64,000 bases of DNA, from sequence record NC_041884.1; one strand, 5' to 3'. Positions 37,891 to 59,637 of the stretch are shown in pieces; the first letter of the stretch is position 1; each line of letters starts with the position of its first letter. Below the pieces are notes generated by a model that saw only the letters and a list, made by a program, of their open reading frames with translations, was not told the origin of the DNA and did not search any database. The position numbers and the translations under genes were made by a program.

Positions 37891-38442
37891 TTAAAAGAGA
37901 ACTGATTCTACTTCAGAGATAGTATTTGCAGCATTAATTGCATCTCTAGCTAGTCTTCCTCTCCTGTGCAATGCAGTAACATGATTTCCTAAAGCTAAAG
38001 CTAGTTGTTGAATTTCTTCAACACTAAGTTCAACTACAGTATCATCTGCTAATGTCCAAGAGACAGGTTGATTAAAAAGATATGCTGCTAAGATTCTTCC
38101 TTGAGAAATATAGTCTGAGTCAAATGGTTTACCATTTAAGACAAATCCTCCAAATTCTTGCTTATTTCTCTCTAGTTTAATCTCTTCCCATTTGAGAGTT
38201 TTAACTTCACTTAAAGAACGAGAGTCCTTCCAAGTTCGACTAACATAATCAAATTTAAAGTAGTAAGCTGGAGGAGAACCAATAGGCATCCAATCAGTAC
38301 CTGTCCAATAATCAGTTGATCTTGGAGGAGGTAATAAAACTGTTGAATGATTTGGAGGAGTTTGACCTATAATTTCAAATGTAGTTCCAGTTAATGTTTT
38401 TATATACTGACCATATTGATTAATTAAATATTCAGTTTTCAT
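37891..38442 (-). CDS. tail-fibre assembly chaperone (DUF4376-like)
   Basis: KWEEIKLERNKQEFGGF...FDSD...WTLADDTVVEL...EVESVLF. Confidence 0.75.
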   Translation of the reverse strand: MKTEYLINQYGQYIKTLTGTTFEIIGQTPPNHSTVLLPPPRSTDYWTGTDWMPIGSPPAYYFKFDYVSRTWKDSRSLSEVKTLKWEEIKLERNKQEFGGFVLNGKPFDSDYISQGRILAAYLFNQPVSWTLADDTVVELSVEEIQQLALALGNHVTALHRRGRLARDAINAANTISEVESVLF

Positions 38443-38447
38443 TATTT

Positions 38448-38993
38448 TTACAATTCAATTGAATTTACTTCTTCTATAGTTGTAGCAGAATCTAGTTTTT
38501 CTCTAGCTGTTCTACTTCTATCATGAATACTTGTAATATGAGTAGAAAGTACTATTTTTAAATTATTTAAATCCTCAACAGATAAATCAATAGTAGAATT
38601 ATTCTTCAAAGTCCAAGAGACAGGAATACCTAAGCTAATAGCATTAAGTATTCTTGTTTGAGAATTTAAATCGGAATCAAAAATACAGTCTTTGTATTCA
38701 AAGCCAGCATCTTCTAATTCTTGTCTTTGGTTTTTAAGTTCTTCCCACTTAGATTTTTTGAACATATCTAAAGTTCTAAAGTCTTCCCATTGTTTAGTTT
38801 CATAATTAAATTCAGAAAATTCATTAGGCTTATTTGGGATGGGGATAAAATTTTCCCCATCCCAATAACTATTAATATCAGTACAAAATTGATTAATAAT
38901 AATTTGATTTTCAATAAAACAATAAGAAGGTTGTTTAGGTCCAGAAGAAGTCATATAGACTCTTCCAGAAAGATCAACAATAGTATATGCCAT
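38448..38993 (-). CDS. tail-fibre assembly chaperone (DUF4376-like), paralogue of 37891-38442
   Basis: KWEELKNQRQELEDAGF...FDSD...WTLKNNSTIDL. Confidence 0.75.
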   Translation of the reverse strand: MAYTIVDLSGRVYMTSSGPKQPSYCFIENQIIINQFCTDINSYWDGENFIPIPNKPNEFSEFNYETKQWEDFRTLDMFKKSKWEELKNQRQELEDAGFEYKDCIFDSDLNSQTRILNAISLGIPVSWTLKNNSTIDLSVEDLNNLKIVLSTHITSIHDRSRTAREKLDSATTIEEVNSIEL

Positions 38994-38995
38994 AA

Positions 38996-41900
38996 TTAAG
39001 CCTTAAATAAAATAATATCAGATTTTAAAGAGTTTGAATCTGTAGTTAAAAAGGTAAAAGAGTTTTCACCAAAAACTTTCCAAACATAACTCAAATAAGC
39101 ATCTCCAGATGGTGATATTTGTAATGAAATTTGATTTTGAACTACTCTAAGTAAATCTGAATCACGTAAGAATAGTAAAACATTATTATTTTGAGAGCTT
39201 TTAATAGCATATCCTGAAGGAGGGTCTACTAAATAATTAACACCATCTCTTAATCCTATACTACTCTCAGTTGTTATATATAGAGCTATACTGAGTTTAT
39301 TTGTAGTATTTGTTAAAGAAGAGAATCTTGATTCTGAGTTGGTTCCTAATTTGGCATAAGCTCTATAAAATTCACCATCAATAGTTCTGGTTTCATCGCC
39401 AGCTGTACCATTAATAGCAGGACGTCTAAAAGTAGTTAACACTAAACATTTATTAATTCTGCTAGGTTGCAGACTTCCAAACCAAACATTGCCATTTTGA
39501 GTTATACTGGCATACTGAGTGACAGAACCATTTTTCATTTGTAAAGTATCCACGGCTAAATCTTTAATATTAGCTGTATCAACTTTGATACTACCTAAAT
39601 TAGCACTAATTGCACTTAAATCAGTTACATCAATACTTTCAGCTTTAATACTTTTAGTTACAATGTTACCACCATCGATTCTAGTAATATTACCTTGAGA
39701 GAATTGAAATGGTTTAGTTTGACTAGCAGATACTTTTTCAAGCATAAACCCAGTCCAGTAAGTTGTAATACCAGTATTTACATTTCTAAGATAATAAGAC
39801 AAATATGGATTAGTTCCACCAGCTGTAAACTTAATATACACTTGTTTCCAACCATCGGAAGCAGATAATACTAGATTACCAGTTCCAGTTCCCGTACCAC
39901 CAGATGAAGTAGCTCCTTCTCTGATAACAGCAGCTAAATTAACTGAAGTTGCAGTAGAAGAAGTTGTTCTAACATAAGCACTAAGAATATACTGTTGTCC
40001 AGTATCTAACTTAAGCCATGCATTAGTAGTGTCACTAGATGGATGCAAATAATAATATGAGTTTGCAGAAGTAGAGACATGCTTAAAGCTATTAGGACCA
40101 AATAATGGATAGTCTTGACTCAATGTATTTGTAGCTCTTTCACCATAACCAGAAGGAAGTGTTGAGTAATTCGAGAAATTATCTAAACCTCCATAAATCA
40201 TATTACCAGAACTTAACAGAATTTGATCTGTAGTAACTGTATCTGATGCAATCTTACCACCATCAATACTACCTCCGCTTGCAACCCATGCTGTATCAAT
40301 AGCTTGAGTAATCAGAGTTCTCTTTTCATAGTAAGTAGCAAAATTAGTATTTAAAGTTGCACGTACTACATCAGAAGTAACATTAAGATTAGACAACAAA
40401 GGATTAACTTGATTAAACAAAGTTGTATAAGCTGTGTTATAAGCATCTTTAGTTGCAGTAGCAATTCCATAAGAATCAGCAGTAGCAGAAATTGTAGTTT
40501 TCTCTTTTAAGATATTATCCCAAATAAGTTTTAACTGTTTTTTCTCTACAGGTGTTAATTTACCATCCGCAGCAATATCATCCACAAGGGAGTTTGCATT
40601 AGCTAAGTTCATAACTACTGTAGGGTCAACTTCAACTACTTTAGCATTAGCTACCCAAGTTGTAGTAGATGTTCCACCATTATAGTAATTCAACCATCTA
40701 ACTGCTATATGAGTGGTAGTCGGTAACATTCTAGCATTTAATAGAACATTTTGACCTATACCTTTCATCATAGATGCCCCAGTTCCAGCAGGCATGATAT
40801 AAGCTGTTCTCTTAACCCAATCTAAATGAGCAGCATGACCACCAGACCAGAAATAAAAGTTAGTATTAACAGCTGAATTATCAGCTCCAGTATCATTTGA
40901 AATACCATGACACCCGATAACAACTCCAGCTTCATTATAACAATGAAGACCAAAATAATCAGTACCAGCAGTATTATTACTAGCTTTCATCCATATACTA
41001 ACTTCATATGCTTTAGAAGGGTCTACAACAAATTTATCTGATAATGCCATAACATCACCAGTTGTAGTGATAGTATGAACAGGTACTGTATAACCAAGGA
41101 AAGCTTGATTACTGACAGTACCAGCACTCCATCTATCAACATTACCACTTCTAGTTACGTTATTAACTAAATTACCAGTAGTATTATCAACATACTTGAT
41201 CAAATCTTCAGGAGCAGGAGACCAAGAAGTATTTCTATTACCAACTTCAAATTTAAAATTGGTTATAGTTAATACACCTTGGAATGCATCTAAACGAATT
41301 TGAACTAATGTAGCAGCAGATGAGCTAGTTACTCCAGACATTTTCCCAACATAAAAGCCAGAAGAATTTGAAGCAGATACTGTAACAGATGGAGCTCCAG
41401 CTGCCCAAGGTACATTAGATAACTGAGGAAGAAATCCTCCAGTTATAGTAGACCCAGATACAGACCAATTAAAACTTACAGTAAATTCATCATTACTATA
41501 TTTTTTACTTAGATTTCCAGCAGTATCATTTAAATAATAAGCTGTTAAACTTTGGTTACCTGTATTGTTACCTGTCAATGTAATAGCATTATCAGTATTA
41601 AGGGCTAAGTTAGTACCACCAACAGATACTTTATCAGTATAAGTCTTAGCACTATCTGCAATTGCCTTTAATAGTTCAGATCTTCTTAAATAATAAGTGG
41701 CAAACCAACTTTGGAACGTACCTCTGGTAATATTACTTGTACTACTCATGTTGCTTAATAATGGAGGAATATTTGCATTCAACGTATCATAAGCAGCACG
41801 ATAAGTAGAGATTGAAAGTCCATAATTAGAAGCTTGCGCTTCATAGTTAGCTTTCTCATTAGTAATTGAGTCCCATTCAGTTTTTAACCATTGTTTCTCT

Positions 41901-42556
41901 AATGGTGTTAACTTATTATCTGAAGATATATCAGATAAGACAGAATTAGCAGTATCAGCATCAGATTGAGCTTTTGCAATACTTTGTAAGAAAGTAGTTG
42001 GAACTAATGAAGCATTGTAAGCCATTGGTGAAATAGTTTGACCGCTTACTGTATAAGCTGTAGTTCTTAAAACAGGAGTTAAATTCTTTTGATGAGTAAT
42101 ATCATATTTTGTCCCACCTCTTAAATAAACATATTCAACAGAGCTATTGCTCATTTGATTAATATTCATTACAGGTGATTGACTACTTGTAGTCCAAGCG
42201 TAAACAACAGTTGTAAAAAATCTATTAACTACTTGAGCTCCCCAACCCGATGCACTAGATGACCATTCAACATTTAAAGAGAATGTTCCAGTGTTATGAG
42301 ACGCCCAAGGAGCAGTATACCTACTTAAAGGAACATAAATTTTAAAGTTATATTGACTAATACCTTGAGCAAGTGCAAAGGTAACTGGATAATAAGTGTT
42401 AGAATCTAAGCTGGATAAATCTATAGTAGTAGTTCTATCAGATTTTTGTTCATCTGAAATAGCCTTTAATAATTCAGAACGTCTAGCATAGTAAGTAGCG
42501 AACCAACTTTGGAATGTTGCTCTTACTACATTACTTGTAGTAGACATATTACTCAA
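38996..42556 (-). CDS. tail fibre/receptor-binding protein; probably the distal part of the giant gene
   Basis: Begins mid-repeat (MSNMSTTSNVVRATFQ) with no RBS; DNKLTPxEK repeats, carbohydrate-binding-like modules, J-like IKAESIDVTDLSAISANLG. Confidence 0.8.
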   Translation of the reverse strand: MSNMSTTSNVVRATFQSWFATYYARRSELLKAISDEQKSDRTTTIDLSSLDSNTYYPVTFALAQGISQYNFKIYVPLSRYTAPWASHNTGTFSLNVEWSSSASGWGAQVVNRFFTTVVYAWTTSSQSPVMNINQMSNSSVEYVYLRGGTKYDITHQKNLTPVLRTTAYTVSGQTISPMAYNASLVPTTFLQSIAKAQSDADTANSVLSDISSDNKLTPLEKQWLKTEWDSITNEKANYEAQASNYGLSISTYRAAYDTLNANIPPLLSNMSSTSNITRGTFQSWFATYYLRRSELLKAIADSAKTYTDKVSVGGTNLALNTDNAITLTGNNTGNQSLTAYYLNDTAGNLSKKYSNDEFTVSFNWSVSGSTITGGFLPQLSNVPWAAGAPSVTVSASNSSGFYVGKMSGVTSSSAATLVQIRLDAFQGVLTITNFKFEVGNRNTSWSPAPEDLIKYVDNTTGNLVNNVTRSGNVDRWSAGTVSNQAFLGYTVPVHTITTTGDVMALSDKFVVDPSKAYEVSIWMKASNNTAGTDYFGLHCYNEAGVVIGCHGISNDTGADNSAVNTNFYFWSGGHAAHLDWVKRTAYIMPAGTGASMMKGIGQNVLLNARMLPTTTHIAVRWLNYYNGGTSTTTWVANAKVVEVDPTVVMNLANANSLVDDIAADGKLTPVEKKQLKLIWDNILKEKTTISATADSYGIATATKDAYNTAYTTLFNQVNPLLSNLNVTSDVVRATLNTNFATYYEKRTLITQAIDTAWVASGGSIDGGKIASDTVTTDQILLSSGNMIYGGLDNFSNYSTLPSGYGERATNTLSQDYPLFGPNSFKHVSTSANSYYYLHPSSDTTNAWLKLDTGQQYILSAYVRTTSSTATSVNLAAVIREGATSSGGTGTGTGNLVLSASDGWKQVYIKFTAGGTNPYLSYYLRNVNTGITTYWTGFMLEKVSASQTKPFQFSQGNITRIDGGNIVTKSIKAESIDVTDLSAISANLGSIKVDTANIKDLAVDTLQMKNGSVTQYASITQNGNVWFGSLQPSRINKCLVLTTFRRPAINGTAGDETRTIDGEFYRAYAKLGTNSESRFSSLTNTTNKLSIALYITTESSIGLRDGVNYLVDPPSGYAIKSSQNNNVLLFLRDSDLLRVVQNQISLQISPSGDAYLSYVWKVFGENSFTFLTTDSNSLKSDIILFKA

Positions 42557-42782
42557 GAGAGTTGGAATGTTACTATTCAGTGTATTATAAGCTGCTGTAT
42601 AATTTGCAGCTGATACATTATAAGTACTTGCTTGTCCTTCATAATTCGCTTTTTCATTAACAATAGAATTCCCATTCTGTTTTCAAGAGTTGTTTTTCTA
42701 AAGGAGTAAGTTTCGAATCACTAGAAATATCTGACAGCATAGCATTTTAGCTTGAATTCAGCTTTTGAAGACTTTTGAGCAG

Positions 42783-45700
42783 TCAGAAATTGCTAGCATC
42801 AATATCTTCTAAAGCTGGTTTCCATTCAGTAGCTTTATTACCTCTTTCGTATTGAACTCTAGAGATATAATAAGTACCTGCTGCTGCTGCATAGAGTACA
42901 ATATTAGGATTAACTGTAGTCTTAGTTAAAGACACAGTATATCTTTTCCAAGTAGTACTTAAAGGAACTACTGAAGTTCCAGTATGACCTTCATTAGATA
43001 CATTCAAAGATATAGCAGCACTAGCCTTAGCCCAAAAGGATACTACTATAGGAATCCCAGTTTCTTTTAATAAATTATTAAGAGTTCTGTAAATACCTTG
43101 TCCAGATCCAGAAGTAACCATTCTCAAACATTTAGTAGCACCATTTGGAATAGTAGTATCTGTAAAGATATCTACAGTTGGTGTACCATTAGTTGTCCAA
43201 TCGTTTCTATTAACTTCAAAAGAAGAGTTAAATAAATAGTTTCTACTTCCAACTTCAATTGAATCAGTATAAGCATTAGCTCTTGCTACATTTGCATCTG
43301 CAATAGCTTTTAATAAAAGAGTTTTTTGATCATAATAATTCGAGAAGTTAGTCTGGAAAGTTGTTCTAACAATATCAGAAGTGGTATTTAAGTTAGTCAG
43401 TATAGGAGTAATGTACCCATTAAGAGTATCATATCTACTATTATATAAACTTGTAGAAACACCTAGAGTATCTGCTTGTTGAACAAGAGTTGGTTTTTCT
43501 TTAACAATTTCATCCCAAATAACTTTAGTATTCTTTTTCTCTACAGGAGTTAATTTATTATCAGCTGCAATGTCAGATAAGGTAGAATTAATTGAAACAA
43601 TTTTATTCTCTGTATCTGCAATAGCAGGAGACCAATCTGTAGCCTTATTACCAATTTCTAATTTAACAGCTTTTGCAAATAGTGCTGCCGCTGTACCACT
43701 AGTTGTAGACCCATTATTATCTATTCGTATATACCCAACTTGACTAGAAGCGTTCGTTTTAAACGTCCAAGTGATATATTGATAAGAAGTTGTTAAGTTT
43801 ATTTTAGTAAATTGGTAAGGTGTACTACCACCTAACCAATAAATATCCATAGTAGAGAAAGCGCCACTACATTTAAACCAACCAGAGACAGTATAAGTTG
43901 TATTAGGATTTAAAGAACCACCATCAATTAGATAGCTAGGTAAGTAAACTTCAGTCGTACCTGTAGTACTTACTGTTCTTTCATCTCCAGAAGATAATAA
44001 TAAATTAGTACCTCCAATAACAAGATCATCAACTTTTTTCTGGGCACCAGCTTGAGTCTCAAATAGATCCATATTCATTACATATGATCTATCTGTATAC
44101 ACAGTCATATCTGATTCCCATGCAATACTCCAACCACCTTGGAAGGAATCTGGAGGATTAGTATGAGTAATAGCAGCTCTGTCAACATATACAGCTGGAT
44201 AACTCCAACTACCTGTTTTTTCTATAATAATAACAACATTCTTATTTGCATCCAAAGCAAAAGAAACGTTAGTAATATTAATACCTTTAGCTGCAACTCT
44301 TTGGTTAGCAGGAAAAGGATTAGTTGTAGTATAAGCATAAAAACCTATATCAATTTGAAATTGAGCATCAGTATTAGCAGTATAATTATACCCAGTAATA
44401 GTTAAATCACACATATAAGCACTAAGCTTAATAGGTGTATGAATTACTAAAATATTAGAAGATCCACCATTTAATCGAGCAGATGCTACTTTAGTAAATA
44501 CTTTACCAATTCCACTATCTAGTCTTTCAATATTATTACTTGGTATTTTAGCTGCATACATTTCATCTACTTGACTACTTAAAGTAGTAGGTGTTGTAAA
44601 GCCACCATTACCAACTCCATTATTAACAATAATATCAATAACATGGGTACCAGCTGTTACACTAAATGAAACAGGACTAGTTGTATAGCTAGTTGCACTA
44701 AATATTAAGTTACCATCTAAATAAATAGCATGAGCATCATCACCAACAAAATTACCTAAATTAATAGTTTTTGTAGTATTTACTGTAAATATAGCTCTAT
44801 GATAGATTACTGAATTTAAATTAGTACTAGTCATCGTGCTTCCATCATTTGCATAATAGGAAGACGTTGTAGGGAACAGATTAATATAAGAATAATCAGG
44901 TACTACATTTATAGATAAATAAGGTTGAGTCTTACCAGCAACAAACACTGCCCATTGATTAGATTTAGAATAATCAAACTGATTTGGTAGCATATTACTA
45001 CCGACAGATTTATTAATATTTAAAATCTGATCATTTAACGTAGCACTAATTTCAGCAGGATTATAACCATTTTGGAAATTAGTACTAGAGCCAACAGTAA
45101 TAGCATCAGCTCTTATTTGAGAAGCTGTAATACTATTTGCAACAATTTGAGAACCATCAATTACAGTTGTAGTAGTGCCATAAAGTAACCATTCATAAAT
45201 GTGATTACCGACATTAACACTATTACCATTACCATAAAGTCTAAAGTATCTAGCTGTAACACCTGGATAGAAAGCATCTTCAGTAGAAACAGTTTGGTAT
45301 TTAACTCCAGCACCATCACCTGTAGAAGGATTGCTTGTACTCCAACCAGTATTAGTAGAATTACCTGCAAAATAATTCCAAGTCACACCATCAATAGAGT
45401 ACTTGATTTTATACCAATAATATCTTGCGTCTTGAGCATACCAATATGCAATACTTTGAGTAACTGCATAAACAGCGCCAAGATCAACTTCAATATAATC
45501 ACGTTCAGTACCACTATTTGAACTGTTTCCAGTACCAAAAGATACATAAACAGAACCAACTTTATAGTTACCATCATTAGGAACAGTTGAAGTAGATGTA
45601 CTACCATTTGAATTAATAGTATAAGTTCTACCAGCTGTTAAATTACCAGCTTTTGATGTACCACCTTCTAATACAATTTTATCTGTAGTTAACGAATTAA

Positions 45701-48700
45701 TCTGAGCAGATTTAATTGTAGCATTAGCAATAAGAACACTATCAATATAAGTACCAGCAGGAACAGGTGTTCCATTAATAGTACCTGGAGAAGTTAAAAC
45801 AATGAATGGTTTTTTATTAGATGTTGGAGAACCAATGTAGAATTGATTTGCCTCAACAGCAAAAGCTGAAGTAGGTGTTCCATTATTAGCATCTGCAATT
45901 AAACCGTAACCAGCAACCAAACCACCCGCATTAACTTTAACAGCATACTTAGCTAAAATTCCATCAGGGCCACTAATAGCTTCATTCACAACTTGAGTTT
46001 GAGCTTGAAGCTCTGTAGCACTCTTAACAAATGCAGTAGCCACTTCACCTTGCTGTAACATAACATCTGTTACAATGAAGTTAGGAGCATACCCAGTAGG
46101 TGAATAAATAATAATATTAATATGCTTTAAATCTGCAATAGTTGTAAAAGTAAAAGTAAGACGACTTGGACTAGTAGTATTAATCGCTAACGAAGTACTT
46201 AATTGACTATTAGAATTTGCAGAGTTAAGTCGATGAATAATAACATTTACATTCTTATTATTTGCATCTAAAGCTTGAGCATAAAACGAAAGAGTATACT
46301 TAGCATTAGATAATAATAATTCGTTACCAGCACTAGTTATAGTCTGAATAAGCCCTTTAAAAGCTGTAGTTGTATCAGTACTATTAACTAAACACCAAGT
46401 CTTGCCATTCGTATCTTTATAAGCTGAAATAGCTGTACCTGAATTATTTCTCCAACCGTATAAACCATTAGTAGTATTACTAAAATTACCATTAGTAATA
46501 ATATTGTCACTACCAATACTTGCAGAAAGAGTTTTAATCTCTTGAGCAATAGCTCCATCAACTCCAGCTTGAGTAAGATACTTAGAATCAATTTGAGCCA
46601 TAGTAGGCTTAGCGGCATCTAGATTCTTAATGTCTGATTTCCAAGGGGACCATCCAGTAGTACCTACCGAGAATCTAGTATGAGTATTTAAACTATCACC
46701 AGCTGTCCAAACTTGAATGATATAACCGCCACTACTGTCATTCCAAGGAATTGTAGTTTCTAATACACCATAACCTGTAATGCCACCAGGAGAACCTATA
46801 GCAGAACCAGTTTTAAATTCTTGTACTTTACGTCTAGGATAATTAGCCCAATACCAACTTGGAGGTTGGTTAACATCTCTAGTATCTGGTAGTTGTAAAG
46901 CTTGCGCAATGTTAGAAGCAGAAATAGTTTGAGCTCCAGCTGCAATAGCTGTATCTGCGTCAGCTTTAGTATAGTAATTATTCATTACAGTACCAAAAGA
47001 ACCTATCAGAACTTCATTTCTATTTGGAGCATACATTTTATCTACTAATGTACTCAATAACTTAGTAAATCTAAAACCACCAACACTGGCATTATTGTTA
47101 ACGAGCACATCAATAATATTCCAACCAGCAGTTAATGTAAATGTAGTATCTACAGTCTCCATTGCTGAACTTATACTTGATTTAATTAAAATTCCATTTA
47201 CATATAAGCCCCAAGCATCATCACCTTGCATTGGTCCAACATTGATAGTTTTTCCAACAGCTACATATACTCTAGTTCTATAAGCACCAATTTTTCCAGT
47301 TGGAAGCGAAAGAGTTCCATTACCTACCGCTGTAGATTCTGTAACGTATAGAGTTGATTCTATAGAATAAGTATTAATAATACTATAAGTAGGAGCAACT
47401 GCTACATAAGCTTCAGGTCTTACAAAGATAACACATAACCATTTATTAGCTTGAGCAAAATCAGGATTAACTGGAAGACGACCATTATAACCATCTACAG
47501 TAAAAGCAGATCTTAACTGTTCGTATCTAAATGCTTGAGCATCATCTTTAGTAGTTAAAGTATCCATCTGACTTTGATAGTCAGCTAGAGTAGACTTAAT
47601 TGCTGGAGGAACATCATCATAGTCTGTTAAATCATATGCCTCAATAGAAGCTAAATAAATTTCTAAAGGACTATCTGTTGTCGGGCTAGGAGTAGAGCCT
47701 GTTGATTTATTGAAATAAACATGACCAGTAGTACTAAACGTACCAGTTGCGCCACATTCAATTCTTCTAATATAAGTCTCATATCTTCCTGTACCTTTAT
47801 TATTCCCAATAAATACATTTCGAGAGTCATTTCCAATAGCATTAGAAGCTGGCAAAACAGTCCACCCTTCAGGAAACTTCATAATATATTTTACTAGAAA
47901 TACAGCATTAGCTCTTGAGTTAATATTTTGATAAAACCCTGCCCAACCTGGAGAACTCAATGTTGAACTTGAAATTTTCATTTCAAAACCAGATGTAGTA
48001 GGATTATCAGAACTCTTTGCTACTCTAGCAGGAACAGTTCCTGAATAACCATTTACACTATTTGTGCCTACTTTAAATGTAGGATCTGCATATAATAATT
48101 TGCCACTATTAAATGACCTAGCTAAATATCCAGCATCTGATACATCTTTAGTTAAAGTGGTTGTAGTTGATTCTAAGTTAGTTATCTTAGTAGCTTGACT
48201 ACCACTCATACCAACAGCAGTATTAATATTATCTATTGCTGTTGCTGTTGAATCTAATTGACTATCAATATCAATTGCAGCTTTAGACCAATCAGAAGGA
48301 ATATTACCTACTTCATATTGAGCTCTACTTACATAGAATGTACTTGCAGCAGAACCATAAATTCTTACTTGAGGTATACCCGCACTAATTACTTTAGTAG
48401 TGAAGAAGTATCTAGTCCATGTAGTACTTAACGTTGCTTCATATGTACTGATATCGTGATCACCAGGAAGTAATCTAACTTTAACTCCAGCTGTATCTGC
48501 TTTTAACCAAACACTAAATGTTATCTCTGTACCAGCAGGTACATTATAAGGTAACGGTCTAAGTATTCCGTGTAAAGTAGCAGTAGTTATAACTTTAAGA
48601 CATTTAGTTGCAGTGGTTGGAATAGTAGCATCATTAACTATTGTTAATGTAGGAGTACCATTTGATAACCAACCAGTTGTATTCACTTCAAAAGAGGAGT

Positions 48701-51700
48701 TAGGTATTAAGTTTGCACTACCTACTTGTAGTGTACTCTTAAAATCAGAAATCTTACCAGCAGTAGCTTGATCAGCTTGAGTCTTAGTATAATACGCATC
48801 AATAACTGTAGCATCTAATTTAGTTTGAACTTGAGCAACAGTAGCTACAGTATTATCTGTGTCATCAGCTGACAATAAGGCTCTTACATGGAAACCTTGA
48901 ACCTCACCTTTATACCCAGAAACTGTATGGTTAATAAAGAAGCCAGGAGAGAATTGAGGATAAATATCTTTTTGAGAAGTTAAATCAAAAATCATCTCAA
49001 CAAATTGCCAATTACCATCAGCAGTAACAACTCTACTTGCACTCGAATACTGAGATGTAGTTCTAATACCATTAGGTTTAATTAATAACCAGTTAAAGCC
49101 ACAACTACCACCACTACCAACTTCTCTTCTCATCCAAACAGAAAATTTATAAGCTCTATTATTAGGAAGAATAGTTCTAGAATAATTCCAACAGTTAGCT
49201 ACTGTAGTAGGTTTACTAAATACATAAGGACCTACTTTACCATCAGTAATAGTAGTAAAATAGTTTGTTAAATCATAGCCATAGTGAGATTGCCATTCAG
49301 AAACTAATTTCAAATTATAATCAGCTGTTAAAGAATCACTATCACGAACAACCTCAAGTTTAGAACTTAATTTAGTATCAATAGCTGCAATAGCTTCATT
49401 AGTACCAGTCTTCGTATAATAATTATTAAGGACAAGAGCATCTACTCTAGGACCTAAATTATCAACTAAAGATTTAGTATTCATTGCTGGATACATGTTA
49501 GTAACTTGACTTCCTAGGGAAGTAGCTACAGATACATTTTCATCTCCAGTACCTTCATTAACAAGTAAGTCAATACAATGCCAACCAGCACTTAAAGCAA
49601 AGGTAACAGCAGTACCACCAGAAGATCTAGGAACACTATCATAGACTTTAGTGTTATCTACATACATAGCAACAGAACAGTTATTAGTCATTGCACCTAA
49701 ATTGATAGTCTTAGCAGATGTAACATTTACAAATGTTCTATATGCAATAAAGACATTATCATGAGTACTTGAAACTAAACTTGTACTACTTCCAACATAA
49801 TTAGAAGTAATAACTGTATTCGCAATTAAATGTTTATATTCAGGAATTACAGTTTCAGCTTCACCACCACGTTTAGTATAAACAACTTTCAACCATTTAT
49901 TAGGTTCTTTATCATCATATTCAGTAGGTAATGTTAATTGAGGATAAACAGAACTTTCTACTGTTGTAATACGTTGATTAATAGCTGTATCTGCATTAGT
50001 TGTAGAAGTTGCTAATGTAGTAATTTTTCCATCTAAACTTCTATCAGCATCTGCAAATTCAGTACGAACATTAGTAAAGCTTTGAGCAGTTGCTAATTTA
50101 TCTGAAGCATAAGTACTTTGGAAAGTAGTTAAATCAGCTGAAGTTTTGTTAAGAACTTTAACTATAGCTGGAGTAGATTTATCAAACGAAGTAGCTCTAT
50201 TACCAAGTTGTAATTGAACTTGTTTAACTTCATACCAATCACCAGCAGCAAATGCTCCAGAAGGAACAGAAATAGCAAATAATTGATTAGTAGATCCAGT
50301 AGCACCTAAATTAGCTACAGTTAATGTTCCAGTGACAAATTGCCAATTAGGAGTAACTGTAAATAATCTATTAGCTATAGTGGCTCCATATGAATATGCA
50401 TACCAACCTAATTGTTTAGTTACATTAGATCTAACCCAGAATGAAACGGTTAATGAATCACCTATAGCAGGTTTAGCATCCGCTACTAAACAACTATGGA
50501 AATAAACTCGTGCTAACCCATTAGTCGCATTTGCACTTACAAACGTTCCTCTATAATATTCTTGATCTCTATCGATCCAAGAAATTGTAGTGTTACCCCA
50601 TTCTTGAGCTGCAACACCATTGCTTTCTAGTGACCAAAGATTTTGACCACCAATCGTCATATTCTCAAACGACGATTTTACAGTATTTAAGGTGTTAGCT
50701 TGAGTATCGAATGCAGTAGTGTTTGCAGATTGATAAGATTCAACTTTTGAATCAATAGCTCTAATTGTATTTACAAAACTAGAATCAAATGGAGTAGGTC
50801 TTGAGCCTTTCTCAATTTTAACATTTCTGATTTCATAAGTACCAACTAATCCAGCAAATCCAAAATGAATACTTGGAGTTGTATAATTAGCTGCAAAATC
50901 ACGAACATGATAAACTCTTCTCCACTTTCCAGCCTCTAGAGTTTCCCCTGTAAGAGGTGTAGTGGCAAGATAACCCATTTGAGTACCCCAGTAGACACTA
51001 GGACTACCAATAGTACCACCAGAAGTAATACGTATATCAAAAGATACACATACTTTATTTCCAGTAGTACATAACTCAAATAATCTAGGTAACTTAGTCA
51101 TATCCATAGTACCACTAACGTAGTTCGCAGCAGCATTAGTAGAGACAACTGTTAAAATAGTTTTATCTGAATTAATAGAAGATGTTAATCCTGCTTCTGC
51201 TGTTCCAGCTGCAAAGAATTTTCCTGGATCATCATAAAGATTATCACCACCTAAAATCATACTATTAAAGGAAGTTGTTAATTGACTTAAACTTTGAGCA
51301 GTTGCACTATTTGCATCTGTTGAAGTTTGTTGAGCTTGTGCAATCTTAGCATCAGTAGCTGTGACATTAGCTGCAAACATTGCATCAATGTCGTAAGGAC
51401 TCTGACTCCAATCTGTAGGCTTAACATTCAATTCTCCATCAAATAATACAGCCCAATGAACGGTAGCTGTAGTTGCAGCATCAGTTCCACTAGGAAATAG
51501 ATAGAAAGAGATATTACTACCAGCACCAGCTGATGTACGAGTAAACGTAATCATTCTGATTTGCTTGGTAGCATTAATTACTTGATTTGCAGCAACAGTC
51601 GATAAACCCTGACTGCCATTAACCCATGCTCCAACATATGAAGTTGTATCAGCACCACCTCTTAAATGAGAAGCACAGAATACTAAAGTATATTTTTCTC

Positions 51701-54700
51701 CAACAGTTAAAGCACCACCACCAATATTATAAGATCCGAAACCATAAGTAGTCCCAGCTCTAACAAGGGCGACATTAGAGGCTATTAATCTATTTTTACC
51801 ATTACTAGTTAGATTACTAAATTGAGTATTAATATTACTGAATTTAGTAGCAGTTGAAGAATCTAAATTAGTAACAACATCAGTTAAATCTTGAATCTTA
51901 CCTAAAGCGACAGTATGGTTATTAGTAGCTAATGTCTTAGCATCAGTAGCTACAGTTAAAGTAGCGGCATTTGCATCACTAGCAGCTTTACTAACAGTAT
52001 TAATCTTAGCATCAGTGGTAATAAACTGTTTACTAATTGATGTATCACTTGCCCAAGGACTTGGATTATTATTATCACCTATTCTAACTTCCAACATCAT
52101 TTGCTCTAAATAAATAATAGCACCTGATAACCCAGTAGGGTTAGAAATTAATAAAGGACAATACGTACCATCAGCCGTAATTTCTACAACTTGACTAAAA
52201 CGTTTTAACGACGTATTAAGAACATGTCTTACACGAGGAGAAGCCACTGTACCATAGATATTAAAATCAATTGGCATACTAGCTAAATTAGATTTAGCAT
52301 AGAAACTAAAGATATAAAAACCTTTAGTTAAGAATAAATTTCTAGTTGTGTAAGCTCCAGCTTCGTTAAAATAGACACCACTACCAACTGAAGTAGTCGG
52401 AGATAAGGTATATCTATTTACTGTTGGATTTTCATAACTAGGTTCAACAACAAAGGTAGTCCCTGAAGTCCAAGGAGGATTAGGAACACCAATAGGAGCA
52501 GATATACTTAAAGGTAATAAATTAACACCACCATTAGGCATAGTAGAAAACTTAGTATCAATAGTTCCAAATTTAGTTGCTGTTGAACTACTTAAATCTG
52601 ATACAGTTGAAGTTAATGTTGCAATAGATGAGTTAGATGCAGCAACATCACCTTTTAATTCAGTTCTGTAACTTTCTAAACGATCTGCTACAGCTTTAGT
52701 TGCATTTGCGGCTACAGTTTTAGCATCATTAATCTGAGCTTGAGAATTGATATAATCTTGCTTTGTATCCTGATAAGCAGGAGTCCAAACAGAACGCTTA
52801 GTTCCCAATTCAATTTGTACGTTACTAATTTTAACAATAGAAGTAAAATTATTACCATTAGCTTTAACAGTAATATTATAAGGACCAACTGTTGAAGAAG
52901 TAGAACAAATAAATGCAAAGTCAGCTACTTTGTTTACAGCATAAGGAAACCCTGCTAAACCATCTTTAACATTATCAACATACATTTCCTCTACTATAAT
53001 TCCATTATTAACTCCAATACTAACATCATTTAAAGTACCAGATTCAACTTTAACTTTAAAAGAGATAACAAATTTAGTATTAATTGGAAGAACAGTATTA
53101 ACAAAAGTATTAATAACTCCTGATGCGTTACTTGAACTCTTAAAGGAGTAAGCATACTCTTCAGGAATAGGAGTAAATAATGAAGGACTTCCAACACCTA
53201 AAGCATCTTTAAAGATCCATAAGTTAGGAGATGACATTAAGTTGTCTCTCTTAAACCCAGCCTTTAAAGTATTAATATCTGTAGATGTTGTTCCAGCTAA
53301 ATTAGTAATAGATTCTTGAAGATCAATAATTGCTCCAGATACCTCTGTATCTAAATCAGATACAGTTGTCTCTAGTGTGTTTAATCTAGAAGCTGATGAA
53401 GCAGCACTAGAAGAAGTAGCATCTAACTGAGATCCAAGACGAGCTTGTGATGCGCTAACAGGTAATAAACTATAAGGAGATAATGATTGACCTTCAGCCC
53501 ACTTAGAAGGGTTAGGATTTGTTCCATACTGTTGTTCTAACATCATACGTTCAATGAACATAGGACGACTAACTGTAGATCCAGCTGCATTTACAACAAA
53601 ACGAACAGTATATTTACCAGCAGTAGTAACATCAAAAACTTTAGAATATCTTGTAAGAGACGTAGCTAAAGTAATGGCTGTATTATCTAAAGCATTTACA
53701 ATATTACTTGCGTCTCTCATTAAATTTACAGAAATGCTTTGATTCGTAATAGACGAATATGCATAAAAACTAAGAATATATTTCCCAGGGTTTAAATCTG
53801 TAAATTCAGCTACAAAAGTGCTAGGAGAAGTGGCTAAAACAACATTAGCTGCTTGGTTAGGATCATACCTAATACCTTTTAGTCCTGTAACGATTGTACT
53901 GTCATATAAAGCAATAGTGTCTGTACTACCTGAAGGATAGAAATTACTTACATCTACAGGATTAGTAACTTTACTACTTAGTAAATTAATTCCAGAGTTA
54001 GGAACTGTAGTGAATTGAGTAGTAAGTCCAGAAATTTGATTAGCACTAGCTGTATCACCATCAGTAATTGCTTTAGTTAAATTAACAACAGTTGCGTCGA
54101 TCTTACTGTTTAATACCTTAGGCATTTCTTTATAGTCAGACCAATCAGTCGGCTTATTACCTAATTCAATCTTCCATCGACTAATGATTAAACCACCATT
54201 AATAGAGTCAGTATGAAACTGAATATTAGGTACAATATCAGTTGTTAAAGGAGTAGTTAAATTAATAACTTTATAGTATTGACACCAACCACCAGAAGAT
54301 AAATTTCCAATAACTCTATCAAAGTCTACATAATTGTAATTAGAAGCTAAGAATAATCTTGGTTTTCCTGTAGGTACTTTAGTAGTATCAACAGCTTTAG
54401 CCCAAAAACTAAATACAATAGAAATACCAGTAGTGTTTCTAAAATTATCAGTAGTAACTTTTAAATCAGTATCAGCACTCCAATAATTAGTTATATACGT
54501 ATAACCTAAAGTAGTAGCTGGATCTTGAATAGTAAGCTTTAAATACCCTTCAGGGGTAATTTCTCTTAATAACCTAGAATTACCTACAGTACCAACACGA
54601 AACTTATCTGTATAAGCTGCTAAATTAGCACTACCAATAGTAAAATTGTCAAATGTACTTTGTAATGTATTTAGTTGACTAACTGCATTACCTACAGCAG

Positions 54701-57700
54701 TTGTTCTATTAGTAGTTTCAGTAGCAATTAATCCTCTAACAGCAACATCATTATTTTCAATCGTTGTAGTAATAGATGTTAATTGAGAACCAAAAGCTTC
54801 ATCAGCATTAGCTCTAGCAGTAGCTTCATTAGTTACAGCAGCATTAACTTGATTAATAGCTTTTGTTGTTATCCAACTAGGTTTAGTATACGCTGAAGTA
54901 ACTGTTCCTTGTTGTAACTGAACATTACGAATTTCAAGTGTTTTACCAACTAAATCAGTAGCAGCTACATTGTTATCAGATGCTACATATCTAATACCTA
55001 ATAAACCATCATAAGAATCTGAAGGAGTTCCAGTATTTGTATTTATAAGATTGTTAAGTCTTACAGTAGTCCATTTATTAACTTCTACAGTTTGTAGAAA
55101 ATTAGCAATCGGATTTGCTTGTCCATAGATGTAAACAAAAACTCTAATCTTAGAGTATGCAGATTTAATTTCAAAAGAAACAGAATGTGGCTGTTCTAAA
55201 TTAATTTTAGACGGAAATTCAGTACTTTTTAAATTTCGCCATAAATTGCTAAAGATTCCACTAGATTGAGCAGTAATCGTTAATTTCTGATGTTGTAAAT
55301 CAGAAGTCATCATTTCTTTAGTAGCAGTACCGTAATCAGAACTACCTGAATTACTAAACCACCATAAATTATCTGTCCCTACTACATTACTTCCAAAAGA
55401 AGCTTGTAAAGAATTAACTTGATCAACTACAGTATCAATAGCTGTAGTTCTAGCTGTTCTCTCGTCTACAATTAAACCTTTTACTGCTACATCATTATCA
55501 TTGACTTTAGTAGTAAGAGCTTGAAATTGACTAGCAAAAGATGCCTCACTTGTTGTAATAGCTTTATTGATTTCAATAATAGAAGCTTCTAAATTACCAT
55601 TACTAGAGACCCAATCAGATGGAGCTGTACCAGTGCCTATTTGTTTTTCCACCATAATCATATCAACTAAGATATAATTATTGTCAGAGACAGCTTGATT
55701 ACCAGTATCACAATAAATTAAAAGATATCCACCTTCAGCTGGTACAGTATTAGGTACTGTAAGAACTGAAGAATATCTTACTTGGGTAGTCGTTAAAGCT
55801 ATTTCAGGACCGTTAATATACAAACCTGAGGATGCTCTAAAAGCAAATTTAAATTTAGTTCCAGCGATTCCTGCTTTAACATAAGCAGATACAATATAAC
55901 TGGTATTAGGTTTTAGTCTTAAATTATCATAAGTAGTTATAGTTTTAGCAAAAGCTAAATAACTGTTAGCTCCAGTCCCAGTCTTTTTAATCTTCCATTG
56001 TTTAGCAACAGAAGGATCTCTTAATGTACTAGGTTCTATTGTAGGAGTAACTGCATTAATTGTAATACTCTTAAGTCCTACAGGATCACTATATTCAGCA
56101 GCTAATAGGTTAACACCACTTCCACTAAAAGAACTCTGTAATAAACTTACAGACTGAGCTAAGGACTGGTCTGCATTGGATCTAGTTGTAGCCTCATTAC
56201 TAACTAAAGAAGACGTAATGCCTTTCTCTGTTTCAAAATCAGATCTTAACACTTCTAATAGTTGAGCATTACTTTCAATATCATTTGATAAAGCTTCTTT
56301 TTCAACTTGAATAATAGATCTAGTTTCAGTATCTAATGTTGTAAATTCAGTTCGAACTTGATCAATCTCTTGAGCTCTAGCCTGAGTCTCATCAGCAATA
56401 GCAGTCTGCAATGAAGAAATATTAGCATTACTGATAACTTCTCTATCTAATACATCGAAAGGAGATTCGATCCAATCAGTTGTCGCTATAGCATCTCCTC
56501 TCACTAACATCGCCCAATGTACAGTAGCTGTACCTGAAGTTGTAGCTTGAGGATAATAATAAAAATTAATTGTTGAAAAATTATTAGTTGTAGGAGTAAA
56601 AGTAGTCTTAAATACCTTCCTTACACTTCCTTTAGTAGTTGTACTAAAAGGAATAGCTACAGATGAACCTTGCCAACCTCTAATCTCAGCAGGAGCTGAA
56701 GGCTCAGAAGAAACATCATGAGTAATACATGCAATTAATGTATATTTCTCATTAATTACTATTGGCTCTCCAATAGTATATCCACCAATTAAATAAGTTC
56801 CAGCAGTACGAACTAGAGCTACATTTGACTTTTTAAGAAGGTTCTTACCAGCTGTATTTAAATTAGTAAAACTTGCATCTAATGTATTTAGTCGAGTAGT
56901 AATTGTTCCAACTTGAGAAGTTCTAATATCTCTTTCTTCAGCAATTAATCCTCTAACTTGAGTATCATTTGATGTAACAGTTGCACTAAGAGCTTCAACA
57001 GTACTAGCTGTAGCAGCACTTTGAGTTGCAGTAGCATCAGCTTTTTCAATAACACTAGCTAAATTAGTTTGCATAGTGCTTGAATCAGTTTCTAATGTAT
57101 CAACACGAGCATCCAGTGCTGTCATTGTAGAAGAATTGGCAATGCCATCTTCAATACGAGTAGTAATTTCTTCTCTTACGTTTGCAAGTGCTGCATCATT
57201 ACTTGTTTTATAATTAGTTATATTTTGAAGTAATTGATCATCACCAGAGATACGAGCAGTTGCTTCGTTAGTAATACCATTTTCTAACTCTGCAATTTTT
57301 CCTAATCTATCAATTTGTTCTAATGTAATGTCTCCAATAAGATCATTAACATTATTCATAACAGTTGTATTATTAGAATTTATTTGACTATTAACATAAT
57401 CAATCATCTCTTGAGTGACAGTTCCAGCATCAATACGGGCATTAAGGTCGTCAATCTTTTGAGATAAGATATTAATATCTTCAATAGCTAAATTATCAAT
57501 TTTAGCATTCAACTGTGTTACAGCAGTTCCTACTTTACTATCAATAGCAGCATTACGATCAATTACTTCCTGATTAAGATCAGCAATTAATTGATCAGTT
57601 TTACTTGTAATAACCCCTTCAATTCTAATAAACTCTGAATTGTAATAAGCTGCCTTAGCATCTACATCAGCTTGAACAGAGTCAATTAAAGTATTAGCAG

Positions 57701-59112: not shown

Positions 59113-59637
59113 TTAATTTTCTTGTTTATATTCTTTTAATATTAAATAAATTTGATCAATCTCTGAATTCAAATCTTGGATTATTAGTCCTCTTCTGTCA
59201 GCCTCAGCTGCCACTTCGACAAGCATTGTTGTACACTCGGTGAATACATTTTCATATCGGTCAACGTATTTGATGACTTCCTCTCTTGAAGCTGAGGTGT
59301 TACGTATACTACTTCTGATTTTACTCTGGGACTGCTGCAAGCTGTTAAGTTGAGACTTAGTACTATTGTACTGATCATTAAGAGCTTTAAGTTTTTTCTC
59401 ATACTGTTCTTCTCTCTGTTTACTTAATGTTTGATACTCTAAAGTCATTGACTTAATTTTAATATTAGCTTTCTCTAAAGCCAGTTGATTAGCAATAAGA
59501 ATATTTTCTTGTTCTTTATTTAAAGCTTTAACTTTATTATGAAGTATGTAATTATTTGTAACTAAAATAGTAAATATTAAACCTACTATAAAGTAAGCTA
59601 TATATTTTAGATTTATACTGAAAAAAGGAACAATCAT
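59113..59637 (-). CDS. i-spanin (Rz-like)
   Basis: N-terminal TM helix then periplasmic coiled coil; contains an embedded lipoprotein ORF. Confidence 0.8.
   Translation of the reverse strand: MIVPFFSINLKYIAYFIVGLIFTILVTNNYILHNKVKALNKEQENILIANQLALEKANIKIKSMTLEYQTLSKQREEQYEKKLKALNDQYNSTKSQLNSLQQSQSKIRSSIRNTSASREEVIKYVDRYENVFTECTTMLVEVAAEADRRGLIIQDLNSEIDQIYLILKEYKQEN
59184..59402 (-). CDS. o-spanin (Rz1-like lipoprotein) embedded in the i-spanin
   Basis: Signal MRKNLKLLMISTIVLSLN-LTAC lipobox, in a different frame fully inside the i-spanin. Confidence 0.75.
   Translation of the reverse strand: MRKNLKLLMISTIVLSLNLTACSSPRVKSEVVYVTPQLQERKSSNTLTDMKMYSPSVQQCLSKWQLRLTEED

What the first reader, a model, noticed from the sequence alone, without database searches (positions are those of the whole stretch)
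42556..42800. Giant fibre gene probably continues into the next ORF (~6,680 codons) across an indel-rich patch
The gap encodes most of a DNKLTP repeat: NAMLSDISSDSKLTPLEKQLLKTEW in the giant's frame, then after TGG-G-AAT, NSIVNEKANYEGQASTYNV...IPTLLSNMSTTS in the downstream frame. It matches the intact copy near 41700-41940. About 42745-42800 looks like several extra A/G bases in short runs. These indels are not CGG-type and resemble homopolymer read error. They are the main reason to doubt assembly quality. If the gene is continuous, it spans 20 kb.
Basis: partly seen in the sequence, partly recalled or inferred. Interest (0 to 1): 0.7.

Follow-up and report, generated by a model that had tools for sequence, protein, structure and literature searches.

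The report
One giant phage fibre gene, split
The two neighbouring tail-fibre ORFs of Acinetobacter phage ME3 are a single gene of about 6,300-6,900 codons in every related phage, and the short stretch that separates them in the ME3 record looks more like a local fault in the deposited sequence than like biology.

Summary
The window is Acinetobacter jumbo phage vB_AbaM_ME3 (KU935715). The finding's stretch lies between ME3_104 (5,419 codons) and ME3_103 (1,183-1,186 codons), both on the minus strand. The stretch encodes, in two frames, a helical-linker module that matches intact copies in the same gene and in relatives (E 1e-15 to 1e-22).

The two ORFs are one continuous ORF in every relative that covers this point. 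These relatives come from metagenome assemblies: three full-length proteins of 6,542, 6,860 and 6,270 aa, and three cut products.

Against three relatives, ME3 has a net surplus of 13 nt within about 250 nt. This gives at least 3 frame changes (7-9 surplus-base events by nucleotide alignment) and no nonsense substitution. Thirteen other 600-nt tiles of the gene show none. Codon differences inside the patch are still mostly synonymous.

ME3 was sequenced by 454 only. A local sequence fault is therefore the best explanation (about 0.7). A real, very recent ME3-only disruption remains possible (about 0.25).

The other split genes in the window (thyA, RecQ-like) recur in independent assemblies, so the assembly is not poor overall. 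This is an ordinary annotation issue of modest interest.

The parts
38996..59042 (-). Giant tail-fibre gene of phage ME3, given as one broken gene. It is annotated as two CDS: ME3_104 (5,419 codons) followed by ME3_103 (1,183 codons from its ATG; the ORF has 1,186 codons). Breaks: at least 3 frame changes by protein-guided alignment, or 7-9 surplus-base events by nucleotide alignment. There are no nonsense substitutions and no large deletion or insertion.
   Evidence: ORFs. Annotation. Colinear over its whole length with single ORFs of 6,542, 6,860 and 6,270 aa. PHROG 5499 'host range and adsorption protein' on both ORFs. Break counts.
42401..42950 (-). A 550-nt tile (outer bounds only) that holds all the frame changes. 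It encodes the end of a beta-sandwich domain and a helical-linker module of the DxKLTPxEK type.
   Evidence: The neighbouring tiles and 13 further 600-nt tiles have 0 frame changes. Codon differences from L005 inside the recognisable pieces are 15 synonymous against 7 non-synonymous.
43260..43562 (-). Intact helical-linker domain (ME3_104 aa 5161-5261), the same kind of domain as the one interrupted in the patch.
   Evidence: AlphaFold2 model m3917fc5808b4 has three long helices with pLDDT 85-97.
42843..43196 (-). Beta-sandwich (galactose-binding-like / GTA head-spike-fibre-like) domain, the last domain of ME3_104.
   Evidence: The model shows strands 164-281. NCBIfam NF048003 GTA_spike_fiber, E 1.7e-13.
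41618..41920 (-).
38448..38993 (-). ME3_102, a DUF4376 protein directly downstream of the fibre gene.
   Evidence: PF14301 in relatives. A DUF4376 gene follows the fibre gene in most contigs, and the gene next to the fibre changes where the fibre tip changes.
37891..38442 (-). ME3_101, the second DUF4376 protein.
59113..59637 (-). ME3_105, a small helix-rich protein directly upstream of the fibre gene.
   Evidence: An identical protein occurs in three metagenome contigs.
59641..61365 (-). ME3_106, a second, ordinary-sized tail fibre with a collar domain.
   Evidence: (PF07484, PF03406 weak).

Best explanation
ME3_104 and ME3_103 are two pieces of one tail-fibre (host-adsorption) gene of about 6,680 codons. 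The protein has a long N-terminal rod. Its C-terminal part is built from alternating modules: a beta-sandwich, carbohydrate-binding-like domain followed by a helical linker of about 100 residues of the DxKLTPxEK type. It ends in an exchangeable distal tip. In the ME3 record the reading frame is lost inside one such linker module, because about 13 surplus bases are spread over about 250 nt. The most likely cause is a local fault in the deposited 454-only consensus, for example a stretch supported by few or poor read ends, or a poor gap-closing read. On that reading the real phage makes one protein of about 6,680 residues, as its relatives do. Shown: the ORFs are one gene in relatives; the breaks are found only in ME3, are clustered and consist of surplus bases; the coding signal is intact. 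Inferred: that the breaks are errors in the record rather than in the phage.
For: (1) P0001 (6,542 aa) aligns with ME3_104 aa 1-5415 at 86% and with ME3_103 aa 454-1186 at 85%. P0003 (6,860 aa) and P0004 (6,270 aa) behave likewise. Cut ORFs on L006, L074 (at least 6,052 aa) and L075 are open across the same point. (2) A single blastn alignment runs through the patch. (3) Frameshift-aware, protein-guided alignment gives 3-6 frame changes, all surplus bases in ME3, and 0 stops when each stretch is read in its homologous frame. The surplus is the same 13 nt against three relatives that differ from one another. Flanking tiles and 13 other tiles have 0 frame changes. (4) Inside the patch, codon differences from L005 are 15 synonymous against 7 non-synonymous, like the flank at 15 against 9. 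The 1,186 codons downstream hold no stop, with dN/dS 0.41. The breaks are therefore very recent or not real. (5) The annotated start of ME3_103 lies in the loop before the last helix of a helical domain. It lacks the AAGGA-type ribosome-binding motif seen before ME3_104, 102, 96, 94, 81 and 80. No promoter- or terminator-like site lies on the coding strand. (6) Sequencing was 454 FLX Titanium PLUS only. On that platform insertions are the commonest error and are enriched at 3' read ends (PMC3116506).
Against: Only 1 of 7 surplus events lies in a homopolymer run of 3 or more, so this is not the textbook 454 error. Wherever the ME3 assembly can be checked against contigs 97-100% identical (about 20 kb), it shows no excess of 1-nt errors. 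The other frame-broken genes of the window are also broken in independent assemblies, so real broken genes do exist in this lineage. No reads and no independent contig at least 98% identical across the patch could be found. The paralogous copies are only about 70% identical at DNA level, so misassembly by repeat collapse is unlikely, and the exact technical cause stays unknown.
Confidence: 0.7

Rival explanations
1. The breaks are real in the sequenced ME3 stock. A recent disruption, specific to ME3, cut the fibre gene. The phage then makes a 5,419-residue fibre without its last ~1,260 residues. The downstream part is either silent or made separately from an internal start, perhaps joining the fibre non-covalently.
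For: The deposited sequence is the only direct datum and it has the breaks. The rest of the assembly checks out well. Real frame-broken genes occur in this lineage (thyA, RecQ-like). The events are mostly outside homopolymers. A second, ordinary tail fibre (ME3_106) is present, so the phage might adsorb without the distal part.
Against: One break would be enough to inactivate the gene. Instead there are 3 or more frame changes (7-9 events) within about 250 nt, and none in the 3.6 kb downstream or in 13 other tiles. If independent events fell at random over the dead 3.8 kb, the chance that 3 all land in one 250-nt stretch is about 0.004. There is no nonsense substitution and the synonymous excess is intact. 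No relative shares the breaks. ME3_103 would start inside a folded domain and without the usual ribosome-binding motif.
Confidence: 0.25
2. The sequence is right and the ribosome bridges it: programmed frameshifts or read-through produce the full-length fibre from the interrupted sequence.
For: Tailed phages do use programmed frameshifts in tail genes (established knowledge). The thyA split is conserved in this lineage and could be a recoding site.
Against: At least 3 frame changes would be needed within about 250 nt. None of the relatives has any shift here. No RNA or DNA structure stands out (z = -0.01).
Confidence: 0.02
3. The annotation is right as it stands: two separate genes by design, a 5,419-residue fibre and a 1,183-residue distal fibre protein, as in phages whose long fibres are built from several gene products.
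For: GenBank and RefSeq annotate two CDS, and later papers treat gp104 as 5,419 aa. Multi-protein fibres are well known (T4 gp34-37, established knowledge).
Against: The inter-ORF stretch is not a spacer. It encodes, in shifted frames, the middle of a module conserved at 87-92% with relatives. All relatives have one ORF. The ORF boundary cuts a folded helical domain.
Confidence: 0.03

Closest known systems
Fibre genes of ME3-like phages in metagenome assemblies (P0001 6,542 aa; P0003 6,860 aa; P0004/P0015 6,270 aa; cut ORFs on L006, L074, L075)
   Same: They are 82-86% identical over the first ~5,000-5,400 residues. They have the same module order and the same four DxKLTPxEK linkers in P0001. 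They sit in the same neighbourhood: DUF4376 genes downstream and split thyA upstream.
   Different: They are uninterrupted. ME3 has about 139 residues more between the third and fourth linker than P0001. The distal tip differs in identity (85%, 80%, 73%, 61%, or none in L074).
Large modular tail fibres of Herelleviridae and other Firmicute phages, e.g. Bacillus phage Shanette gp115 (AGR47009, 3,592 aa), Bacillus phages JL and CP-51, Enterococcus phage EfV12-phi1
   Same: They share the helical-linker plus beta-sandwich modules at 30-39% identity. The module recurs 2-14 times per protein in 2,159 representative clusters.
   Different: They are about half the size or less, come from different phage families and hosts, and share no colinearity outside the modules.
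Carbohydrate-binding beta-sandwich domains: F5/8 type C (PF00754), CBM_4_9 (PF02018), GTA head-spike fibre domain (NF048003); lambda-J-type Phage_Tail_Tip (PF09327)
   Same: The profiles match above or near their cut-offs in both ORFs. The model shows a beta-sandwich.
   Different: Only single domains match. Nothing is known about the ligand. The fold comparison could not be run.
Frameshifted or split ORFs produced by unpolished 454 assemblies
   Same: The platform matches, insertions predominate, and the events are clustered and occur in this record only.
   Different: The events are mostly not in homopolymer runs, and the rest of this assembly shows no such errors where it can be checked.

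Membership tests
ME3-like giant fibre gene (PHROG 5499 'host range and adsorption protein') | Colinear homology over the whole length | tested here: met
   ME3_104 aa 1-5415 matches P0001 aa 1-5419 at 86%. ME3_103 aa 454-1186 matches P0001 aa 5810-6542 at 85%. PHROG 5499 matches both ORFs at E = 0.
ME3-like giant fibre gene (PHROG 5499 'host range and adsorption protein') | One uninterrupted ORF of about 6,300-6,900 codons | tested here: not met
   In the ME3 record the frame is lost, with at least 3 frame changes. The feature is met in all relatives.
ME3-like giant fibre gene (PHROG 5499 'host range and adsorption protein') | Same gene neighbourhood | tested here: met
   DUF4376 genes lie downstream. 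ME3_105, ME3_106 and split thyA lie upstream on the same contigs.
454 homopolymer-length error | Genome read on the 454 platform without a second technology | tested here: met
   PMC5000817 states 454 FLX Titanium PLUS and names no other method.
454 homopolymer-length error | Length differences sit in runs of identical bases | tested here: not met
   Run lengths, counting the surplus base, are 1 (3 events), 2 (3 events) and 4 (1 event).
454 homopolymer-length error | Similar errors elsewhere in the same assembly | tested here: not met
   About 20 kb was compared with contigs 97-100% identical. The 1-nt gaps are few and balanced, with none in runs of 4 or more.
454 homopolymer-length error | Low coverage or low base quality at the site | not testable with these tools
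   No reads or quality values are available.
Programmed ribosomal frameshift | A single shift site conserved among relatives | tested here: not met
   There are 3-6 frame changes, and none in any relative.
Pseudogene by natural decay | Breaks scattered over the inactivated part, nonsense substitutions, relaxed constraint | tested here: not met
   All breaks lie within about 250 nt. There are 0 in 13 other tiles, 0 nonsense substitutions, and 15 synonymous against 7 non-synonymous codon differences in the patch.
Modular phage tail fibre with carbohydrate-binding beta-sandwich domains | Recognised fibre and binding domains, and homology to annotated tail fibres | tested here: met
   PF00754, PF22633, PF09327 and PF02018. 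NF048003. tblastn hits to tail-fibre or receptor-binding genes of 215 phage records.
Modular phage tail fibre with carbohydrate-binding beta-sandwich domains | Presence in the virion and a role in adsorption | not testable with these tools
   No proteomic or adsorption data for ME3 were found in the papers read.

The most novel reading that the evidence does not exclude
The interrupted sequence is real, and ME3 builds its fibre from two polypeptides: a 5,419-residue shaft, and a separately started distal piece of about 1,180 residues that begins inside what is a single helical domain in all relatives. That would be a freshly caught fission of a giant fibre gene into two subunits.
Probability: 0.08. 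Interest if true: 0.45.

Novelty: new member of a known kind. Interest (0 to 1): 0.3.

Why it matters
ME3 gp104 is quoted in the literature as a 5,419-residue tail fibre. If the gene is continuous, the protein has about 6,680 residues, and its receptor-binding distal tip is the part now filed under a different protein (gp103). This matters for studies of Acinetobacter phage host range and for domain catalogues of fibres. It also gives a family-level picture. ME3-like phages, no longer orphans, carry one fibre gene of 6,270-6,860 codons with an exchangeable tip. Beyond that, this is an ordinary correction to a record.

Tried and rejected
- I reached their contigs through the small downstream genes instead.
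- **No independent near-identical copy:** I searched for a contig at least 98% identical to ME3 across the patch and found none. This used exact look-ups of ME3_103, 102, 101 and 100, IMG/VR (ME3 only), JGI metagenome contigs (best 35-54%) and a protein search with the first 500 aa of ME3_103.
- **Gap counting:** plain nucleotide gap counting is noisy where identity is below 80%; controls gave 11-38 spurious frame changes. I replaced it with a protein-guided, frameshift-aware alignment. The first version timed out, and edge effects were removed.
- **Repeat collapse:** misassembly by repeat collapse is rejected, because the paralogous DNA copies are only about 70% identical.
- **Local sequence features:** no hairpin or other structure (z = -0.01), no composition anomaly, and no promoter or terminator on the coding strand.
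- **'Genome-wide 454 errors':** rejected as a general claim.
- **Family and fold assignment:** the PDB sequence search gave nothing useful, and Pfam has no family for the helical linker alone.
- **recA insertion:** Rfam found no intron in the recA insertion.
Full report
**Identity of the window.** The window is part of Acinetobacter phage vB_AbaM_ME3 (KU935715 / NC_041884), a 234.9-kb jumbo myovirus; record position equals window position plus 62,000. The finding lies between two minus-strand CDS. ME3_104 is annotated 'hypothetical' or 'tail protein' and has 5,419 codons. ME3_103 is annotated 'structural' or 'tail protein' and has 1,183 codons from its ATG, in an ORF of 1,186 codons. The genome announcement states that the DNA was sequenced by 454 FLX Titanium PLUS and names no second method. 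It also singles out the 'massive protein of 5,419 amino acids' (PMC5000817). Later comparative papers repeat 5,419 aa, and none mentions gp103 as its continuation.

**The observation.** After the end of ME3_104, part of a repeat module continues in the same frame, and the rest of the module is in the frame of ME3_103. I compared each stop-free piece separately and never joined them.
- The 29-aa piece matches ME3_103 aa 204-229 (81%, E 3e-17) and relative P0001 aa 5435-5458 (92%, E 5e-20).
- The 47-aa piece matches ME3_103 aa 225-271 (66%, E 4e-15) and P0001 aa 5454-5500 (87%, E 7e-22).

The three motifs that mark one module (GNKATxW, DxKLTPxEK, LLKAI[AS]D) occur in that order in the intact copies. 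Here they straddle the ORF boundary: the first is at the end of ME3_104, the second lies between the ORFs, and the third is at ME3_103 aa 29.

**Relatives.** A protein search with the C-terminal 720 residues of ME3_104 returned metagenome-derived proteins of 6,542 aa (P0001), 6,860 aa (P0003) and 6,270 aa (P0004).
- P0001 aligns with ME3_104 aa 1-5415 at 86% and with ME3_103 aa 454-1186 at 85%. The stretch in between corresponds to the inter-ORF stretch plus ME3_103 aa 1-453, with about 139 residues fewer. P0003 and P0004 behave likewise.
- Through the small downstream genes I fetched the DNA of several contigs. L004/L005 carry P0001. L006 has a cut ORF of 1,674 aa. L074 has a cut ORF of at least 6,052 aa on a 30.5-kb contig. 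L075 has a cut ORF of 1,344 aa.
- All of these are open across the equivalent point, and blastn aligns ME3 with them straight through the patch.

The two ME3 ORFs are therefore one gene in at least four or five distinct lineages of ME3-like phages.

**Counting the breaks (counts only).** By nucleotide alignment against L005, at 87.5% identity, the 550-nt tile has ten length differences, nine of them surplus bases in ME3. The tile immediately upstream, at the same identity, has none. Nucleotide gap counts proved noisy where identity falls below 80%, so I wrote a protein-guided alignment that allows frame changes and printed only counts.
- With in-frame tile ends, it gives 3-6 frame changes in the tile, all surplus bases in ME3, plus 2-3 codon-sized surpluses.
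- It finds no stop when each stretch is read in the frame homologous to the relative, which means no nonsense substitution.
- The same holds against L005, L006 and L074, and the flanking tiles give 0 frame changes.
- ME3 is 547 nt long where each of the three relatives is 534 nt. Seven of nine surplus events fall at the same ME3 positions whichever relative is used, and the events span about 240-250 nt.
- Thirteen further 600-nt tiles (7.8 kb of the gene) have no frame change.

Only one of seven events lies in a run of three or more identical bases.

**Is the patch still 'coding'?** In the two recognisable pieces, codon differences from L005 are 15 synonymous against 7 non-synonymous, compared with 15 against 9 in the upstream flank. 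The 1,186 codons downstream contain no stop and differ from L005 with dN/dS 0.41, against 0.13 for a part of ME3_104. There is no unusual structure, composition, promoter or terminator on the coding strand.
- The annotated ATG of ME3_103 lacks the AAGGA-type motif that precedes ME3_104, 102, 96, 94, 81 and 80.
- An AlphaFold2 model of the last 300 residues of ME3_104 (mean pLDDT 78.9) shows what a module is: a helical domain of three long helices that starts at the DxKLTPxEK motif, followed by a beta-sandwich.
- By alignment, ME3_103 would begin in the loop before the last helix of such a domain. The ORF boundary therefore cuts a folded unit.

**Artefact or real?** Three facts favour a fault in the record.
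- Sequencing was 454 only.
- Insertions are the commonest 454 Titanium error and are enriched at 3' read ends (PMC3116506).
- The events are tightly clustered. One break would be enough to kill the gene. Further independent events should then scatter over the 3.8 kb that would be dead, yet all lie within about 250 nt. For three events the chance of that is about 0.004 (my calculation).

Three facts count against it.
- The events are not homopolymer errors.
- Wherever ME3 can be compared with contigs 97-100% identical (L009-L011, L064, L066, L069-L071; about 20 kb), there are only a few balanced 1-nt gaps and none in runs of 4 or more.
- The other frame-broken genes of the window are real. The thyA split recurs in a JGI contig 98.8% identical to ME3 and in at least eight other contigs. 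The decayed N-terminal half of the RecQ-like helicase recurs in six independent contigs.

I could not obtain reads or an independent near-identical contig across the patch. Misassembly by collapse of the paralogous copies is unlikely, because they are only about 70% identical. My estimates are 0.7 for a local fault in the deposited sequence, 0.25 for a real and very recent ME3-only disruption, and a few per cent for recoding or for two genes by design.

**What the gene is.** Both ORFs match PHROG 5499 ('host range and adsorption protein') and several 'tail protein' PHROGs.
- Pfam finds F5/8 type C, a NedA-like galactose-binding domain, Phage_Tail_Tip and, weakly, CBM_4_9.
- NCBIfam finds the GTA head-spike fibre domain on the last beta-sandwich of ME3_104.
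- The linker plus beta-sandwich module is a widespread building block. It occurs in 2,159 representative clusters at E of 1e-3 or better, mostly in proteins of 1,000-5,500 aa with 2-14 copies. Examples include the tail fibres of Bacillus and Enterococcus phages such as Shanette gp115, which has 3,592 aa.
- Among ME3-like phages the distal ~730 residues vary from 85% identity to none, and the gene just downstream varies with them. This is what one expects of a receptor-binding tip and its partner (inference).

The likely working model is a very long fibre whose serial beta-sandwich domains bind surface carbohydrate and whose tip sets the specificity. This is inferred from homology, not shown.

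**Verdict.** The specific attribution to homopolymer read error and the wider doubt about assembly quality are not. This is an annotation or record problem in a known kind of gene, of modest interest.

Noticed in passing
window 61533-62493 (-), ME3_107/ME3_108: Thymidylate synthase is in two overlapping ORFs (Pfam PF00303 positions 9-158 and 170-266), which implies one frameshift. The same split is present in a JGI contig 98.8% identical to ME3 and in at least eight other ME3-like contigs. One relative has a fused ThyA of 323 aa (P0050), 90-91% identical to both pieces. The split is therefore real and widespread. It could be a gene surviving in two halves or a programmed frameshift.
   Followed up: partly
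window 27891-29142 (-), ME3_82/ME3_83: In the RecQ-like helicase, the Helicase_C and Zn-binding part is an intact 227-codon ORF. The DEAD domain upstream survives only as pieces in two frames, with at least two frame changes, many stops and missing profile positions. The same ORF-less stretch precedes the gene in six independent contigs, so this is old, real decay and not a sequencing error.
   Followed up: partly
window 31180-33297 (-), ME3_87 (recA) and ME3_88: Compared with three relatives (L064, L075, L076), ME3 carries an insertion of about 1.35 kb that holds the Vsr-like endonuclease gene ME3_88 close to the start of recA. The RecA ORF has 263 codons in ME3, L067 and L074, against 293-294 where the insertion is absent. 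This looks like a mobile endonuclease gene. No Rfam intron family matched.
   Followed up: partly
window 38996-41200 (-), and loci L074, L075, L077, L006: The distal ~730 residues of the fibre are exchanged among ME3-like phages. Identity to ME3 is 85% (P0001), 80% (L075, L077), 73% (P0003), 61% (P0004, L006) and none (L074). The gene directly downstream of the fibre also changes: a different DUF4376 protein of 198 aa in L074, and three other small genes in L075.
   Followed up: partly
loci L004-L011, L064-L077: ME3, published as an orphan and singleton, now has close relatives (about 75-100% DNA identity) in at least twelve sequencing runs or metagenomes, including contigs of 115-135 kb. A more distant genome-sized contig of 233.6 kb carries a 7,798-aa fibre homologue, P0005.
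   Followed up: no
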